Virus record (IMG/VR): IMGVR_UViG_3300032562_000004
Coordinates: 124,001 to 188,000 of that record
Reading direction: 5' to 3' (one strand)
Length of the DNA: 64,000 nt
In this document: piece after piece, positions 19,004 to 49,310 of the stretch
How positions within the stretch are numbered: the stretch's first letter is position 1
Layout of the letters: each line of letters begins with the position of its first letter
Made by a program: the position numbers and the translations under genes
The notes under the pieces: model-generated
What the model was told of the DNA's origin: nothing
The model's database searches: none
Seen by the model: only the letters and a program-made list of their open reading frames with translations

Positions 19004-19534
19004 TCAAATATTCTTCGCTTTATAAAATATGTGGTGACCAATTTGTGTAACTCGTTGTAAGTTCCAACCTGGATTCACCTGTGTGTTATGATAGTATAAC
19101 GCATTTGTTCTCGCTATTGTATCATGAACATCTGGTTCCGTCAAGGCCTTTCTTGCAACCATTTCAGATTCATCGTAGGCATATTTGTTTCTTACCAACA
19201 TATTTTTCATACAAGTCCATGAAAACTGGCATACCACCAACTTATTAACATAACTACGTTGGTATACCACTTCACATACTGTACCACCAAACTTTGGATC
19301 GTTTGCACGATTGATTGTTACCTGTGCTACTGCCAATTTACCTTCATAAGATTCTGTTGCAGCTTCAAAATAAACATTATCTGCGAGGCATTTTAATTGT
19401 TTATTGAAATCTTCACTCACTTGTTGTTCTACTACCATTTGAGTAACCTCTTGTGAAATAGATGGGAATGAATATGCCAATAAAGCACAACTTAACAACA
19501 ATAATATAGCTTTTGATTTTGATGCGAACATCAT
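19004..19534 (-). CDS. SleB/CwlJ-type cell wall hydrolase
   Basis: CLADNVYFEA...GKLAVAQV..NR...CEVVYQ...CQFSW...LYYH...IGHHIFY. Confidence 0.9.
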   Translation of the reverse strand: MMFASKSKAILLLLSCALLAYSFPSISQEVTQMVVEQQVSEDFNKQLKCLADNVYFEAATESYEGKLAVAQVTINRANDPKFGGTVCEVVYQRSYVNKLVVCQFSWTCMKNMLVRNKYAYDESEMVARKALTEPDVHDTIARTNALYYHNTQVNPGWNLQRVTQIGHHIFYKAKNI

Positions 19535-19599
19535 ATCTCCTTTTGTTTACGGTCGTTACTCTGACCTTGGACCCAAGTACTTCTGACTTTGTGATAGGG

Positions 19600-19935
19600 T
19601 TTGTGGAACGATTGTTTCTGTTGCCAAGTACAATCGCTGGAAAACTCCGACAGGTGTTTAGGCTGCCAGTGCGTAACTTTCATCGTTAGCGTTTAATTTA
19701 ATTTGCTTCTTCGACCGAGTGTCCTCAATCCTAACGGCTTTCGCTTTGCCGATTCTCCATTGTTCTAATTATTGCCATGTCGAAACCGGTCGCCCACATC
19801 AAAAACATATTAGCTGGTAATACTCACTCCATTAAAAACCTGCCGTTGTGACTGGTTCACTAATATGCTTATGGTGTAGGCGGGGAGAATCGAACTCCCG
19901 TCCACAACAACTTTCAAACAACTTCAACGAATGTG
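19600..19935 (-). ncRNA. ssrA: Circularly permuted (two-piece) tmRNA, tag ANDESYALAA (outer ends approximate)
   Basis: T-arm + CGCCTACACCA (ends 19872), a 74-nt intervening segment, then GTGGGCGACCGGTTTCGAC (G1=19797); G3.U70; tag frame 19690-19658. Confidence 0.92.
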
Positions 19936-20052
19936 TATCAATAATGGTCCTAATCTATAACTAGTATAAACATCGCCATTATTAAATCTAACTTGGCCCC
20001 AATGAAAAATTCCACCACGGTACCAATGTGTCTTATATACTCTAATCTTCAT
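19924..20052 (-). CDS. 42 aa hypothetical protein
   Basis: Own translation MKIRVYKTHWYRGGIFHWGQ...; co-oriented, fills the gap. Confidence 0.35.
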   Translation of the reverse strand: MKIRVYKTHWYRGGIFHWGQVRFNNGDVYTSYRLGPLLIHIR

Positions 20053-20105
20053 GTCCGACCCACCACCTATTTTATTCGAAATAGGAAACCATTATATCAT
20101 TATAT

Positions 20106-20768
20106 TTATGCTTTGGCAACATTTTTTTGGTAATAATCAATCGCTTTCACCAATCCAGGTATGTGGTCATCGGTTTTCTGCTGAAATACCAATGGTGCTT
20201 CATTCTCTACCGCCATGATAATTACCAGATTATCAATTGGTGTACCAATCATTTCTTCATACATCAAAGCATATGCGGATGTTTGCCAAAAGTAATCTTC
20301 AATGTGTGCCATTTCTTTTATTTTCTTTGATGTTTTAAAGTCAATAACAGATAATACACCATCAAATTCACCAATACAATCCACACGACCTGCCATGCCT
20401 AATTGTTTAGACCATAATGCACATTCTTGATAATGAATATTGTTGATACGATTTAATTCTGGCTTAATTGATTGGAACATCTCCAACGCATCAGGCATGA
20501 TTGTGCCTAACTTCTCATTGTTTAGATATCTCTCGCACAAGGTGTGTACATTGGTGCCACGACCTGTTGCTTGTTTAGAGATTCTATTGGCTTCTGCTTC
20601 ACCAACTCTCTTACGCCATTTCATGATACCCTCTTTCTTTTGGGCGCCAATCACAGTAGTAACAGACGGCAATTTAGAACCATCAGGTAGAGTATAGTAC
20701 CTCATACCATCAGGAAAGGTTTCAGATTTTAAATCAATGAGGTCTTTTGGTGGGCAAAAAGTAAACAT
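20106..20768 (-). CDS. PD-(D/E)xK (Cas4/RecB-like) exonuclease
   Basis: PSVTTVIG...GRGTNVH...AGRVDCIGEFDGVLSVIDFKTS. Confidence 0.85.
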   Translation of the reverse strand: MFTFCPPKDLIDLKSETFPDGMRYYTLPDGSKLPSVTTVIGAQKKEGIMKWRKRVGEAEANRISKQATGRGTNVHTLCERYLNNEKLGTIMPDALEMFQSIKPELNRINNIHYQECALWSKQLGMAGRVDCIGEFDGVLSVIDFKTSKKIKEMAHIEDYFWQTSAYALMYEEMIGTPIDNLVIIMAVENEAPLVFQQKTDDHIPGLVKAIDYYQKNVAKA

Positions 20769-36906: not shown

Positions 36907-37202
36907 TCTTTACAAGCACTATCATTTCCATGTTTACATACATCTAATAACGGATTATCAAAATCATATACCCGATCTGCTTGTGCTAATTTAGCTTTTA
37001 ATAATTCATTCTCAACTGCCAATTCATCTGCTCGAACCATTTCGTGTGAGTGTGTCGAGAACAGCAGGTCTCGTTCCTTTTGTAGCTGGCGTAGCTTTGC
37101 CTCAGCTTTTATTAAATATGCTTCAGCATTTCCATAGTAGGATTCTGCGCCGGCAAGCATGGTTTTTATTTCATCAGCTAGTTCATTTGCGTTCATTACC
37201 AT
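36879..37202 (-). CDS. Coiled-coil hypothetical protein with C-terminal Cys motif
   Basis: CKHGNDSACKEC. Confidence 0.5.
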   Translation of the reverse strand: MVMNANELADEIKTMLAGAESYYGNAEAYLIKAEAKLRQLQKERDLLFSTHSHEMVRADELAVENELLKAKLAQADRVYDFDNPLLDVCKHGNDSACKECYLEAVKK

Positions 37203-43834: not shown

Positions 43835-43929
43835 TGGTAGTAGATATAGGTTATGATCCTATCCGTTGCAGCCCATCTGACCACTCTCCCAGGTTTATAA
43901 AACCCGGCCGCACACCAGTGCTATCTACC
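43835..43929 (-). tRNA. Atypical 95-nt tRNA, anticodon TAT (reads Ile AUA)
   Basis: 7-bp acceptor + ACCA; 4-nt D-loop; loop TTTATAA; long variable arm; T-loop ATCATAA. Confidence 0.7.
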
Positions 43930-46360: not shown

Positions 46361-46975
46361 TTAATTGATTAGATCTTCTATAGATTTTTCGAACCCCACT
46401 GTAATTACTAATCTCGGTCCTGGGCTCAAATGTACGGTATGCACATAGTCTGTGCGTACAAATGCGCTAGGAGTTAGTAAATTTGATTCTGCAGCCGTAG
46501 CAGGGCCTAAATATTCCATTTTTTCTGCTACTGTTGTTCCTGGCATAGTTAGCCCAGTAAAAGGTAATCCAGTTCGAGTACTTACTTGAGTAATCGAGTA
46601 TAGTCTTTTATCAGTATGATGAAAATCGGTCCACCAATGCATAGGATCTTCTGGATTACCTTTTATTAATATATTAAATCTACTTTTTAAAATTTTATGG
46701 TTTTCGTTATCCACATGGGGTCTTCCATAACCTTGATTTTCTAAATTAGCTAAATGTGCGGTTATGATTAGATTGGATGTATCACAATTATATTGCGACA
46801 AATAATTTAATAATTCTTGTCCAGCACTTACTTCACGCCATTCGTGCTGTAACTTTCTTTGATCCCAATCTAAATTATGATAAAAATTTTCATTAAAATG
46901 ATTTTTATATCGATTAAGTATCCAATCTTTAGCTTCCTGCGAAAAATCAAAATCTGTTTTATGGAATAGTAACAT
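46361..46975 (-). CDS. 2OG-Fe(II) oxygenase-like protein, tandem paralogue 2
   Basis: RPHVD (HxD), SAFVRTDYVHTV, PRLVITV. Confidence 0.6.
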   Translation of the reverse strand: MLLFHKTDFDFSQEAKDWILNRYKNHFNENFYHNLDWDQRKLQHEWREVSAGQELLNYLSQYNCDTSNLIITAHLANLENQGYGRPHVDNENHKILKSRFNILIKGNPEDPMHWWTDFHHTDKRLYSITQVSTRTGLPFTGLTMPGTTVAEKMEYLGPATAAESNLLTPSAFVRTDYVHTVHLSPGPRLVITVGFEKSIEDLIN

Positions 46976-47606
46976 TGATTAACTCTTCTATACTTTTATC
47001 GAAAGGCACAGTAATTACCAATCTTGGTCCAGGACTTAATTTTATAGTATGAATATAATCTGTGCGTACAAATGCGCTAGGAGTTAGTAAATTTGATGCT
47101 GTATCTGTAGCAGGACCTAGATACTCCATTTTTTCTTCATTAGTGTGTCCTGGCATAGATAAACTACTAAATTCTTGATTAGTACGTGTATTTAAAACAT
47201 TACTATAGTACAAGCGTTTATCTGTATGGTGAAAGTTAGTCCACCAAAGCATAGGATCTTCTGGATTACCAAGCACTATTATATTAAATTTTGAAGTTAC
47301 TGTTATTTTACCTTTAGCAGGTCCGTATAATTGTTCGGCGTCAACGTGCGGGCGACTATAATATGGTATTGTTAAATTTGCCAGATGAGCAGTTATGATC
47401 AGATTAGATGTATCGCAATTATATTGAGAAAGGTAAGACAATAATTCTTCTCCAGCAATAGATGCTCGCCATTCATGTTGTAGTTGATTTTGAATCCAAT
47501 CATAATTATGATAGAAATTTAATTTGAAGTGATCTTTATATCGGTTAAGTAACCAATCTTTAGCTTCTTGTGAGAAATCAAAATTTGTTTTATGATATAA
47601 CAGCAT
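46959..47606 (-). CDS. 2OG-Fe(II) oxygenase-like protein, tandem paralogue 1
   Basis: RPHVD, SAFVRTDYIHTI; shares long identical blocks with its neighbour. Confidence 0.6.
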   Translation of the reverse strand: MLLYHKTNFDFSQEAKDWLLNRYKDHFKLNFYHNYDWIQNQLQHEWRASIAGEELLSYLSQYNCDTSNLIITAHLANLTIPYYSRPHVDAEQLYGPAKGKITVTSKFNIIVLGNPEDPMLWWTNFHHTDKRLYYSNVLNTRTNQEFSSLSMPGHTNEEKMEYLGPATDTASNLLTPSAFVRTDYIHTIKLSPGPRLVITVPFDKSIEELINVTIP

Positions 47607-48616: not shown

Positions 48617-48736
48617 ACTAATAGTTCCTTTATGTTTATACTACTGAACAAATATTTATTGTTTTTTTGCGTTGGCCTGCAAAAATTGCTAGGTTTTGGC
48701 ATATTTTTAAGTTTAATATACGCATATAATGAAGTC

Positions 48737-48764
48737 AAAAGAATAGGGGTCGAAGCCCCTATCT
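48737..48764 (-). terminator. Terminator at the end of the tmRNA coding piece
   Basis: ATAGGGGC-TTCG-ACCCCTAT-TCTTTT. Confidence 0.8.
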
Positions 48765-49097
48765 GTTATTTTCTGTTTCGACGGATAACTCCGCAAAGCA
48801 GTGATTAAACTGCTAATGTTTGGCGTTGTGCTGTACGAGCAGAGAAACGAATTCCCTTACCTGAAACAGTTACTTCGCCTTTAGATGCGTTTGCATTTAA
48901 GTTTTTCGCTTGATTTACAGTCATCGCCTACTGTGTTGCCTCTTTCATTATCTCACCATGTCGAAACCTTGTCATCCCCACTGAAACATACTACAGCTTT
49001 TGGCCTCGCTACCGATAACTCGGTTCGGTAATATGCTTCGGTGGAGATGCCGGGAATCGAACCCGGGTCCACAGCGCCTTCACTACGAAGGAATTAC
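48765..49097 (-). ncRNA. ssrA: Second circularly permuted tmRNA, 29-aa tag ANASKGEVTVSGKGIRFSARTAQRQTLAV (outer ends approximate)
   Basis: GGACCCGGGTTCGATTCCCGGCATCTCCACC, an intervening segment, then GGGGATGACAAGGTTTCGAC (G1=48979); G3.U70; tag frame 48894-48805. Confidence 0.9.
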
Positions 49098-49106
49098 AAC
49101 AATTCT

Positions 49107-49310
49107 TTACAGCGGAAGAATATTTGATGCTTGCTTGCCTTTAGGGCCTGCCACTACATCGAATGTTACCGCTTGATTCTCTTTTAAACTCTTAAAACCA
49201 TTTGTGCTAATTGCGGAAAAATGTGCAAACAATTCCTCACCACCAGCATCGGGGGTAATAAATCCAAACCCTTTTGCATCATTAAACCACTTTACTTTAC
49301 CTGTTGCCAT
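49107..49310 (-). CDS. cspA: Cold-shock protein
   Basis: [18 protein letters not shown]...FAHFSAI...[10 protein letters not shown]. Confidence 0.95.

What the first reader, a model, noticed from the sequence alone, without database searches (positions are those of the whole stretch)
19600..19935. Phage-encoded two-piece tmRNA with a host-like tag
Order is permuted: acceptor piece ending CCA, intervening segment, then coding piece. The acceptor stem is unusual (G1-C72, U2-A71) but keeps G3.U70. The tag ANDESYALAA is a canonical ClpXP-type degron resembling betaproteobacterial tags, which hints at the host (inference). Two-piece tmRNAs are known from alpha-, some beta-proteobacteria and some cyanobacteria. 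No smpB is in the window.
Basis: partly seen in the sequence, partly recalled or inferred. Interest (0 to 1): 0.6.

Follow-up and report, generated by a model that had tools for sequence, protein, structure and literature searches.

The report
Two-piece tmRNA in T4-like phage
The flagged stretch is a real ribosome-rescue RNA gene (a permuted, two-piece tmRNA) carried by a T4-like lake phage; it belongs to a large, already described class of phage tmRNAs, and its tag says little about the host.

Summary
On the minus strand, 19932-19600, lies a permuted tmRNA gene. ARAGORN calls the tag ANDESYALAA; Rfam tmRNA_permuted scores 104 bits against a cut-off of 47. The acceptor stem reads G1-C72, U2-A71, G3.U70, followed by A73 and an encoded CCA. 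Nine related phage sequences support its helices with compensatory changes. It sits at a locus conserved in T4-like aquatic phages (nuclease, tmRNA, endolysin, gp59, gp32) and falls in an all-viral clade of beta-type permuted tmRNAs. No smpB is present, so the host must supply every partner. Phage two-piece tmRNAs are already published, so this is a new member of a known kind. The host hint is weak. The identical tag occurs in at least 120 bacterial species, mostly with one-piece tmRNA. The same RNA type occurs in phages of Stenotrophomonas and Synechococcus. U2-A71 is rare: 2 of 63 distinct phage sequences and 0 of 106 bacterial ones. It changes a known minor AlaRS determinant. The window also holds a second permuted tmRNA at 48714-49131, but the 236-kb record is very probably an assembly chimera joined at 37021-37197. 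The two tmRNAs therefore belong to different phages. No expression data exist.

The parts
20091..20119 (-). sigma-70-like promoter candidate: TTGCCA, 17-nt spacer, TATAAT with TG before the second hexamer, overlapping the 3' end of the nuclease gene
   Evidence: 11 of 12 matches. Genome-wide, TTG[AC]C[AT]-N16-18-TATAAT occurs 21 times on the coding strand and once on the other. In related lake strains the promoter lies about 36 nt from the tmRNA, because 19933-20053 is missing there. This is a consensus match only; use of the promoter is inferred.
19933..20053 (-). 121-nt leader or insert between the promoter and the tmRNA; absent in related strains
   Evidence: contigs of runs X14, X18 and X20 join 19932 to 20053/20054 with only 5-12 other letters between. 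It is not repeated elsewhere in the record. Its 42-aa ORF has no Pfam match.
19872..19932 (-). acceptor piece: 5' strands of helix P2, T arm (19899-19883), acceptor 3' strand (19882-19876), A73, encoded CCA (19874-19872)
19798..19871 (-). intervening segment, expected to be removed from the precursor; a hairpin whose base extends the acceptor helix
   Evidence: 12 further pairs (alignment columns 66-79 / 260-273) with compensatory changes in 9 relatives; fold z-score -2.4. The length varies from 4 to 194 nt among 67 phage genes.
19600..19797 (-). coding piece: acceptor 5' strand 19797-19791, GGUUUCGA loop 19787-19780, P2 3' strands 19779-19752, hairpin 19751-19735, extra hairpin 19730-19713, tag frame, terminal hairpin 19638-19607
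   Evidence: The 3' end is not defined by a terminator; it was placed just after the conserved terminal hairpin.
19658..19690 (-). tag reading frame: GCU resume codon to TAA, encoding ANDESYALAA
   Evidence: Among 37 phage relatives the terminal ALAA is spelled with all 4 Ala and all 6 Leu codons, which points to selection on the peptide.
19004..19534 (-). endolysin (Hydrolase_2) gene that starts directly after the tmRNA with no terminator between
20106..20768 (-). PD-(D/E)XK exonuclease gene directly upstream; a conserved neighbour of phage permuted tmRNAs
   Evidence: In 27 of 67 viral loci a homolog lies on the same strand within 1.5 kb upstream of the tmRNA.
37021..37197 (.). 177-nt repeat shared by two phages; the probable chimeric joint of the record. 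It separates the T4-like phage that carries this tmRNA from a jumbo-phage fragment.
48714..49131 (-). second permuted tmRNA (tm2, 29-codon tag). It belongs to the other (jumbo) phage and is not part of this system.

Best explanation
This is a genuine permuted ssrA gene of a T4-like freshwater phage of about 162 kb, kept by selection at a conserved locus. Inferred mechanism: host RNA polymerase transcribes it early, probably from the consensus promoter at 20119-20091. The precursor folds so that the acceptor stem closes the 74-nt intervening hairpin. Host RNase P cuts 5' of G1 (19797), and host 3' processing trims to the encoded CCA (19872). This leaves an acceptor piece of about 60 nt or more and a coding piece of about 200 nt, held together by the acceptor stem and helix P2. 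Host AlaRS charges it through G3.U70 and A73. Host SmpB and EF-Tu bring it to ribosomes stalled on broken mRNAs. Translation resumes at GCU (19690) and adds ANDESYALAA, which marks the product for host ClpXP-type proteases. The likely benefit is that ribosome rescue and amino-acid recycling continue after the phage shuts off host transcription and mRNAs are being cut. Shown here: the gene, its structure, covariation, selection on the peptide, conserved synteny, and the absence of phage-encoded partners. Inferred: expression, processing, charging, tagging and the benefit.
For: - The detectors agree: ARAGORN and RF04321 at 104.3 bits against a cut-off of 47.
- The two pieces co-fold at -80 kcal/mol, giving the T arm, a 7-bp acceptor stem and two P2 helices.
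- RNAalifold on 9 relatives predicts 61 pairs, 30 of them with compensatory changes. These cover P2, the T arm, the acceptor stem, its extension into the intervening segment, two hairpins before the tag and the terminal hairpin.
- T-arm pairs left free by the search pattern are canonical in 63 of 63 sequences, with 2 or 4 pair types.
- G3.U70 and A73 are present. U2-A71 is a double, pair-preserving change that is also found in a different tmRNA (L005).
- The tag is under peptide-level selection.
- Synteny nuclease-tmRNA-endolysin-gp59-gp32 recurs in 27 of 67 loci.
- A 12.4-kb contig from another sample (L004) holds a 100% identical copy, and the stretch is present in 20 lake or freshwater runs.
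- Phage two-piece tmRNAs are documented: PMC9004378 reports 53 two-piece forms among 133 unique phage tmRNAs.
Against: - There is no expression evidence: no RNA run holds the stretch.
- U2-A71 replaces G2-C71, which is a listed bacterial AlaRS determinant (PMC9976931). Charging may therefore be weaker.
- Among its subfamily, only L094 scores lower on RF04321 (99 bits). On RF01850 it scores 76.8 bits, below the cut-off of 84.
- By my own reading, the second stem of pseudoknot PK1 is reduced to 2-3 pairs.
- A 121-nt insert separates the gene from its likely promoter.
- No terminator follows.
- The record encodes no SmpB, CCA-adding enzyme, ClpP or ArfB, so function depends wholly on an unknown host.
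Confidence: 0.75

Rival explanations
1. It is a decoy. The RNA binds host SmpB, and perhaps AlaRS, but is charged poorly because of U2-A71. It would then damp host trans-translation rather than perform it, as proposed for the tRNA-like-domain-only molecule of mycobacteriophage DS6A.
For: U2-A71 changes a known AlaRS determinant. It is rare: 2 of 63 distinct phage sequences, and 0 of 106 bacterial and 0 of 21 viral one-piece tmRNAs. A tRNA-like-domain-only molecule inhibits tmRNA, probably by titrating SmpB (PMC4131195).
Against: The tag frame is intact and canonical, and it is under peptide-level selection in the clade. The resume-codon context and the helices before and after the tag are conserved. 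A decoy needs none of these. The close relatives have G2-C71.
Confidence: 0.08
2. It is a decaying or nearly neutral passenger: an inherited tmRNA gene under relaxed selection in this phage lineage.
For: Among its subfamily only L094 scores lower on RF04321. The PK1 second stem is weakened. A 121-nt insertion lies between the promoter and the gene. The outer P2 helix is shortened.
Against: Every helix still pairs. The change at 2:71 is compensated on both strands. The tag has no frameshift or stop. The sequence is identical in an independent sample.
Confidence: 0.1
3. It is host DNA: a recently captured or co-assembled bacterial ssrA, or an attachment-site remnant of a temperate element.
For: The record is chimeric elsewhere (at 37021-37197). 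tmRNA genes are common integration sites (PMC4383910, listed).
Against: The gene lies between T4-like genes on the same strand, at a locus conserved in 27 other viral contigs. It is complete. Its nearest relatives are all viral. Bacteria with the same tag mostly have one-piece genes.
Confidence: 0.02

Closest known systems
Two-piece tmRNAs of phages of streamlined marine bacteria (Methylophilales phage Melnitz, pelagimyophages; Buchholz et al. 2022, PMC9004378)
   Same: A permuted ssrA in a T4-like aquatic myophage, placed after an early-type promoter, with no smpB reported. The paper counts 53 two-piece forms among 133 unique phage tmRNAs, 50 of them aquatic.
   Different: Melnitz's RNA is alphaproteobacterial in type and carries a glutamine riboswitch in its 3' domain. 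Here the best clade model is beta_tmRNA, no riboswitch family matches, and the locus is nuclease-tmRNA-endolysin-gp59-gp32.
Betaproteobacterial two-piece tmRNA (Rfam RF01850; Sharkady and Williams 2004, as cited in PMC9004378)
   Same: The architecture is shared: P2, T arm, an acceptor stem closing an intervening loop, one hairpin before the tag and one after. The tag is of the ANDxxYALAA type.
   Different: The score is 76.8 bits, below the cut-off of 84. An extra 7-bp hairpin (19730-19713) is inserted before the tag. It has U2-A71. In the tree it lies in an all-viral clade apart from both bacterial groups. Only 4 of 151 sampled genomes of that bacterial order have the beta form at all.
tmRNA of Stenotrophomonas phages (IME-SM1, Marzo, Yut2 and others) and the unannotated one of Synechococcus phage BUCT-ZZ01
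   Same: These are beta-type permuted tmRNAs in isolated phages (RF01850 95.6 and 94.5 bits).
   Different: The tags differ (VAANDDSYTVRIAA, ANDETFSMALAA). The phage backbones differ. Similarity to tm1 is limited to the tRNA-like core and the tag region.
One-piece tmRNAs of mycobacteriophages (Bxz1 group, Wildcat) and the tRNA-like-domain-only RNA of DS6A (PMC4131195)
   Same: Phage-borne ssrA without smpB.
   Different: They have the standard, unpermuted gene form and actinobacterial-type tags. DS6A lacks a tag frame.
Caulobacter two-piece tmRNA (Keiler, Shapiro and Williams 2000, as cited in PMC9004378)
   Same: It is the experimentally shown model for how a permuted gene gives two base-paired RNAs that work in trans-translation.
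   Different: It is of the alphaproteobacterial type, chromosomal, and has its own smpB partner in the same genome.

Membership tests
tmRNA, permuted (two-piece) gene form (Rfam RF04321) | Covariance-model score at or above the curated cut-off | tested here: met
   104.3 bits against 47, E 3e-19.
tmRNA, permuted (two-piece) gene form (Rfam RF04321) | Permuted order: 3' tRNA half ending in CCA, then the intervening segment, then the 5' tRNA half with the tag frame | tested here: met
   CCA at 19874-19872, intervening segment 19871-19798, G1 at 19797, tag 19690-19658.
tmRNA, permuted (two-piece) gene form (Rfam RF04321) | tRNA-like domain: a T arm and a 7-bp acceptor stem formed between the two pieces, kept by covariation | tested here: met
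   Co-fold; compensatory changes. Note that the acceptor 5' strands were located by requiring pairing, so the T arm and P2 are the independent evidence.
tmRNA, permuted (two-piece) gene form (Rfam RF04321) | Alanine identity: G3.U70 and A73 | tested here: met
tmRNA, permuted (two-piece) gene form (Rfam RF04321) | Alanine identity: G2-C71 (a minor determinant, otherwise near-universal in tmRNA) | tested here: not met
   U2-A71. The determinant list is from PMC9976931.
tmRNA, permuted (two-piece) gene form (Rfam RF04321) | Tag frame that opens with an Ala resume codon, closes with a stop and ends in a hydrophobic ALAA-type C-terminus | tested here: met
tmRNA, permuted (two-piece) gene form (Rfam RF04321) | Pseudoknot PK1 between P2 and the resume codon | tested here: inconclusive
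   The first hairpin is supported. By my own reading of alignment A1, the second stem covaries in relatives (UGC/GCA, UGUA/UACA, UAUC/GAUA) but is only 2-3 pairs in tm1. This was not tested with a pseudoknot-aware count.
tmRNA, permuted (two-piece) gene form (Rfam RF04321) | SmpB partner encoded in the same genome | tested here: not met
   PF01668 is absent from the whole record. This is usual for phage tmRNAs; supply by the host cannot be tested here.
tmRNA, permuted (two-piece) gene form (Rfam RF04321) | Processed into two RNAs, alanylated, and active in trans-translation | not testable with these tools
   No RNA run holds the stretch.
Betaproteobacterial two-piece tmRNA (RF01850) | Score at or above 84 bits | tested here: not met
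   76.8 bits. Five of the six subfamily relatives that reach a clade-model cut-off pass clearly at 95-124 bits, and L030 only just at 84.5.
Betaproteobacterial two-piece tmRNA (RF01850) | Groups with bacterial members of the family | tested here: not met
   In the tree, tm1 lies in a 21-row all-viral clade (support 97/96). The 7 bacterial rows form two other groups.
Alphaproteobacterial two-piece tmRNA (RF01849) | Score at or above 50 bits and the best model of the clan | tested here: inconclusive
   50.8 bits just passes but is lower than the beta model's score.
Permuted tmRNA of T4-like aquatic phages | Lies in a T4-like genome at the nuclease-tmRNA-gp59-gp32 locus | tested here: met
Permuted tmRNA of T4-like aquatic phages | Glutamine riboswitch in the 3' domain (the Melnitz type) | tested here: not met
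   No riboswitch family matches.

The most novel reading that the evidence does not exclude
Beta-type permuted tmRNA is an old, vertically kept gene of T4-like aquatic phages, and its tRNA-like module is traded between co-infecting phages. L005 carries the body of the jumbo-phage lineage (tm2) but tm1's T arm and acceptor stem. The T4-like and jumbo phages here also share a 177-nt stretch that differs by a single base. On this reading, the rare U2-A71 acceptor stem is a retuned alanine identity. It might lower competition with host tRNA-Ala or tmRNA, or fit a particular host AlaRS, rather than being drift.
Probability: 0.15. Interest if true: 0.5.

Novelty: new member of a known kind. Interest (0 to 1): 0.3.

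Why it matters
- It adds a well-supported member to the phage two-piece tmRNAs. It also shows that in T4-like aquatic phages this gene sits at a fixed locus and forms an all-viral clade. That argues for a real role in infection rather than accidental capture.
- It shows that a tmRNA tag is a poor host marker.
- It offers a natural 2:71 variant for testing how AlaRS reads tmRNA.
- As a practical point, the record that holds it is probably a chimera of two phages. Features counted across the joint (two tmRNAs, 31 tRNAs, 236 kb) should not be ascribed to one virus.

Tried and rejected
- **Two specialised tmRNAs in one jumbo phage.** This looked attractive at first: 0 of 33 other phage records hold two. 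I rejected it once contigs from other samples showed the record to be a chimera at 37021-37197 with two gp43 polymerases.
- **Host from the tag.** The degenerate-tag scan hit at least 120 species, including Ca. Methylopumilus universalis, but nearly all have one-piece genes. That genome has no beta_tmRNA match. This gives no host call.
- **Cyanophage test.** psbA/psbD, hli and CP12 are absent, although gp32 and gp20 are closest (about 55%) to T4-like cyanophages.
- **Expression.** No RNA run holds the stretch. Laying contigs showed only strain variation and the 121-nt indel.
- **wcaG-like RNA upstream.** It scores 22.6 bits against a cut-off of 42, and its fold z-score is +0.4. I treat it as chance.
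- **Phage-encoded helpers.** A CCA-adding enzyme, ClpP and ArfB were not found.
- **Record not searchable.** The 201,964-base metagenome contig could not be searched as a genome. I read its ends through the look-up of encoding contigs instead.
- I made no formal count with a typed structure string, to avoid long typed text; RNAalifold's own pair table was used instead.

Full report
**1. The observation**

ARAGORN reports a permuted tmRNA on the minus strand at 19567-19966 with the tag ANDESYALAA. Rfam's general model for permuted tmRNA (RF04321) matches 19932-19658 at 104.3 bits. The cut-off is 47 and the E-value is 3e-19.

Reading the strand gives these parts:
- T arm: 19899-19883.
- Acceptor 3' strand: 19882-19876.
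- A73, then an encoded CCA: 19875-19872.
- Intervening segment: 74 nt, 19871-19798.
- Acceptor 5' strand: 19797-19791.
- Tag frame: GCU at 19690 to TAA at 19660-19658.

The stem is G1-C72, U2-A71, G3.U70, G4-C69, G5-C68, C6-G67, G7-C66. SmpB is absent from the window and from the whole 235,812-base record.

**2. Structure**

The two predicted pieces co-fold at -80 kcal/mol. The fold has the T arm, the 7-bp acceptor stem and two further intermolecular helices of 9 and 7 pairs. So the pieces can pair.

I collected permuted tmRNAs from viral contigs with a degenerate pattern over the T arm and acceptor strand. ARAGORN called 67 of them as permuted. Nine form a subfamily with tm1. On these, RNAalifold predicts 61 pairs, 30 with compensatory changes. 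The supported elements are:
- the outer and inner P2 helices;
- the T arm;
- the acceptor stem;
- a 12-pair extension of the acceptor helix into the intervening segment;
- a CGGC/GCCG hairpin (19751-19735);
- an extra 7-bp hairpin (19730-19713) specific to this subfamily;
- a terminal hairpin after the tag (19638-19607).

A second PK1 stem seems to covary in relatives by my own reading, but it is weak in tm1.

The tag is under selection as a peptide. Among 62 distinct phage genes, 42 tags start with AND and 37 end with ALAA. That ALAA is spelled with all four Ala codons and all six Leu codons.

**3. The odd acceptor stem**

Position 71 was left free by my search pattern. G2-C71 occurs in 64 of 67 genes. 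U2-A71 occurs only in tm1, in its identical copy L004, and in L005, which is a different tmRNA. None of 106 bacterial and 21 viral one-piece tmRNAs has it.

G2-C71 is listed among the bacterial AlaRS determinants, together with A73, G3.U70 and G4-C69 (PMC9976931). The change is therefore rare and is compensated on both strands. It touches a minor identity element and may lower charging. That is an inference.

**4. What kind of tmRNA it is, and where it sits**

With permissive filters the best clade model is beta_tmRNA, at 76.8 bits, below its cut-off of 84. The alpha model gives 50.8 bits. Sixteen further loci were scanned: 12 viral and 4 bacterial (L134, L168, L188, L189). Of the 12 viral permuted tmRNAs, 10 score best on the beta model at 84.5-157 bits. 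These include the RNA of Stenotrophomonas phage IME-SM1. One (L052) scores best on the alpha model, and one (L094) matches only the general permuted model. Separately, Synechococcus phage BUCT-ZZ01 carries an unannotated beta-type tmRNA scoring 94.5 bits.

In a maximum-likelihood tree tm1 is sister to L064. It lies inside an all-viral clade of 21 rows (support 97/96). Seven bacterial beta-type sequences form two other groups.

The neighbours are T4-like: a PD-(D/E)XK nuclease upstream, and endolysin, gp59, a deoxyribonucleotidase and gp32 downstream. Of 67 viral loci with a permuted tmRNA, 27 have the nuclease homolog on the same strand within 1.5 kb upstream. 24 have gp59 or gp32 homologs. 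So tm1 occupies a conserved site of a large group of T4-like aquatic phages.

**5. Expression signals**

A consensus promoter lies at 20119-20091: TTGCCA, 17-nt spacer, TG-n-TATAAT. Such consensus sites are 21 to 1 in favour of the coding strand in the record.

Related lake strains lack 19933-20053, which brings that promoter to about 36 nt from the first helix. No intrinsic terminator follows, and the endolysin start is at 19534. The 3' end is presumably made by processing at the terminal hairpin.

No RNA run holds the region. Transcription, processing and charging are therefore inferred.

**6. The record is probably a chimera**

The window also contains 26 tRNAs and a second permuted tmRNA (tm2, 48714-49131). 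I first read this as one phage with two tmRNAs, which none of 33 other records shows. Further checks argue against that reading:
- Three contigs from other samples carry the right-hand part of the record at 99.997-100% identity. Two of them leave the record at record position 161,021. The third starts at 161,757 and runs 84 kb past the record's end.
- A 201,964-base contig starts at 161,179 and runs down to position 1. After 545 nt and a second copy of a 177-nt repeat, it continues into the sequence that those other contigs carry.
- A 161,869-base contig has the same start. It ends inside that repeat with a terminal overlap of about 127 nt, the mark of a circular assembly.
- The two parts each encode a full gp43-type DNA polymerase.
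- They differ in G+C: 35.1% against 37.9%.

The simplest reading is a T4-like phage of about 161.7 kb joined by the assembler to a fragment of a jumbo phage. The T4-like phage holds tm1, five tRNAs and portal, sheath, terminase, gp43, gp32 and gp59 genes. The jumbo fragment holds tm2, 26 tRNAs, a cold-shock gene, queuosine-pathway genes and a Lon-like protease. The joint is the shared repeat at window 37021-37197. I did not see read-level evidence, so this is a strong inference, not proof.

**7. Host**

The phage comes from lake or freshwater metagenomes: 20 runs from 18 studies. gp32 and gp20 are nearest, at about 55%, to T4-like cyanophages. But psbA/psbD, hli and CP12 are absent, which suggests a heterotrophic host.

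The exact tag is encoded in at least 120 bacterial species. They include Acinetobacter, Psychrobacter, Moraxella, Methylophilaceae (among them Ca. Methylopumilus), Neisseriaceae, Herbaspirillum and others. ARAGORN called 112 tmRNAs in them: 107 one-piece and 5 permuted. Only 4 of 151 sampled genomes of the order of Advenella have a beta-type permuted gene.

Together with the all-viral clade, and with the occurrence of this RNA type in phages of Stenotrophomonas and Synechococcus, this means that neither the tag nor the gene form identifies the host.

**8. Function and rivals**

My best reading, with confidence 0.75, is a working tmRNA that relies on the host for SmpB, AlaRS, EF-Tu, RNase P and proteases. 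It would keep ribosome rescue going during infection.

The rivals are:
- an SmpB-titrating decoy (0.08), suggested by U2-A71 but contradicted by the conserved tag frame;
- a decaying passenger (0.10), suggested by the low model scores and the insert but contradicted by intact, compensated helices and identity across samples;
- host DNA (0.02).

**9. Novelty**

Phage two-piece tmRNAs are published. PMC9004378 counts 53 two-piece forms among 133 unique phage tmRNAs, and PMC11915505 lists 79 phage tmRNAs in its database. This is a new member of a known kind. It has a rare acceptor-stem variant and an extra hairpin. Interest is modest.

Noticed in passing
window 37021-37197 (record 161,021-161,197): A 177-nt repeat is shared, with one base difference, by a T4-like phage of about 162 kb and a jumbo phage. 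The 235,812-base record is very probably an assembly chimera joined here. There are two gp43 polymerases, G+C is 35.1% against 37.9%, a 161,869-base circular-looking contig holds the T4-like part alone, and other contigs continue differently on either side.
   Followed up: yes
window 48714-49131 (-): A second permuted, beta-type tmRNA (RF01850 117.6 bits) lies in the jumbo-phage part. It has a 29-codon tag, ANASKGEVTVSGKGIRFSARTAQRQTLAV, and its 3' end is encoded as ACCG, with no CCA. It starts right after the stop of a cold-shock gene (49107-49310). A perfect TTGACA-18-TATAAT promoter lies at 49367-49338 and a terminator at 48763-48742. A 79%-identical relative (L093) begins AKANTGEVTVSG, so the long tag is conserved.
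   Followed up: partly
record 218,464-220,743 (outside the window; locus L362:10464-12743): The jumbo-phage part encodes a 759-aa Lon-like ATP-dependent protease (phrog_4871, 789 bits). A phage with its own odd-tagged tmRNA and its own protease might run a self-contained tagging and degradation pair. This was not examined.
   Followed up: no
L005:4403-4810 (-): This is a mosaic tmRNA. Its body, tag (ANASNDEVFALAA) and locus (tRNA-Met upstream) are those of the tm2 lineage. Its T arm, acceptor stem (with U2-A71) and the base of the intervening helix are identical to tm1. That suggests exchange of the tRNA-like module between phage lineages.
   Followed up: partly
L003:1461-1879 (-) = ON615601.1 116,861-117,279: Synechococcus phage BUCT-ZZ01 carries an unannotated beta-type permuted tmRNA (tag ANDETFSMALAA, RF01850 94.5 bits) overlapped by two 'hypothetical protein' calls. 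Nearby is a tRNA with anticodon CUA, which ARAGORN labels Pyl.
   Followed up: partly
window 19933-20053: A 121-nt stretch between the promoter and the tmRNA is missing in related lake strains, replaced by 5-12 letters. It is not repeated in the record, folds moderately (z -1.7), and its 42-aa ORF has no family.
   Followed up: partly
window 20052-20141 (-): There is a weak match to wcaG RNA (22.6 bits, cut-off 42, E 0.098) over the promoter region. The fold is no better than shuffles (z +0.4), so it is probably chance.
   Followed up: yes
window 43835-43929 (-): ARAGORN calls a 95-nt tRNA-Ile with anticodon UAU at position 31. That is unusually long, and Rfam's tRNA model did not list it at gathering score.
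   Followed up: no
L168, L189, L134, L188, L382 (bacterial loci): Advenella, Alcaligenaceae and two unclassified proteobacterial MAGs carry permuted tmRNAs with the same tag, ANDESYALAA. They form a group of their own, scoring 158-169 bits on RF01850, against 250-296 bits for two other bacterial members. Only 4 of 151 sampled genomes of the order have the permuted form.
   Followed up: partly
record 170,361-171,606 (window 46361-47606): Two adjacent paralogous genes, about 74% identical at the DNA level, sit in the jumbo-phage part, with a third homolog in the sequence that follows the repeat in other contigs.
   Followed up: no
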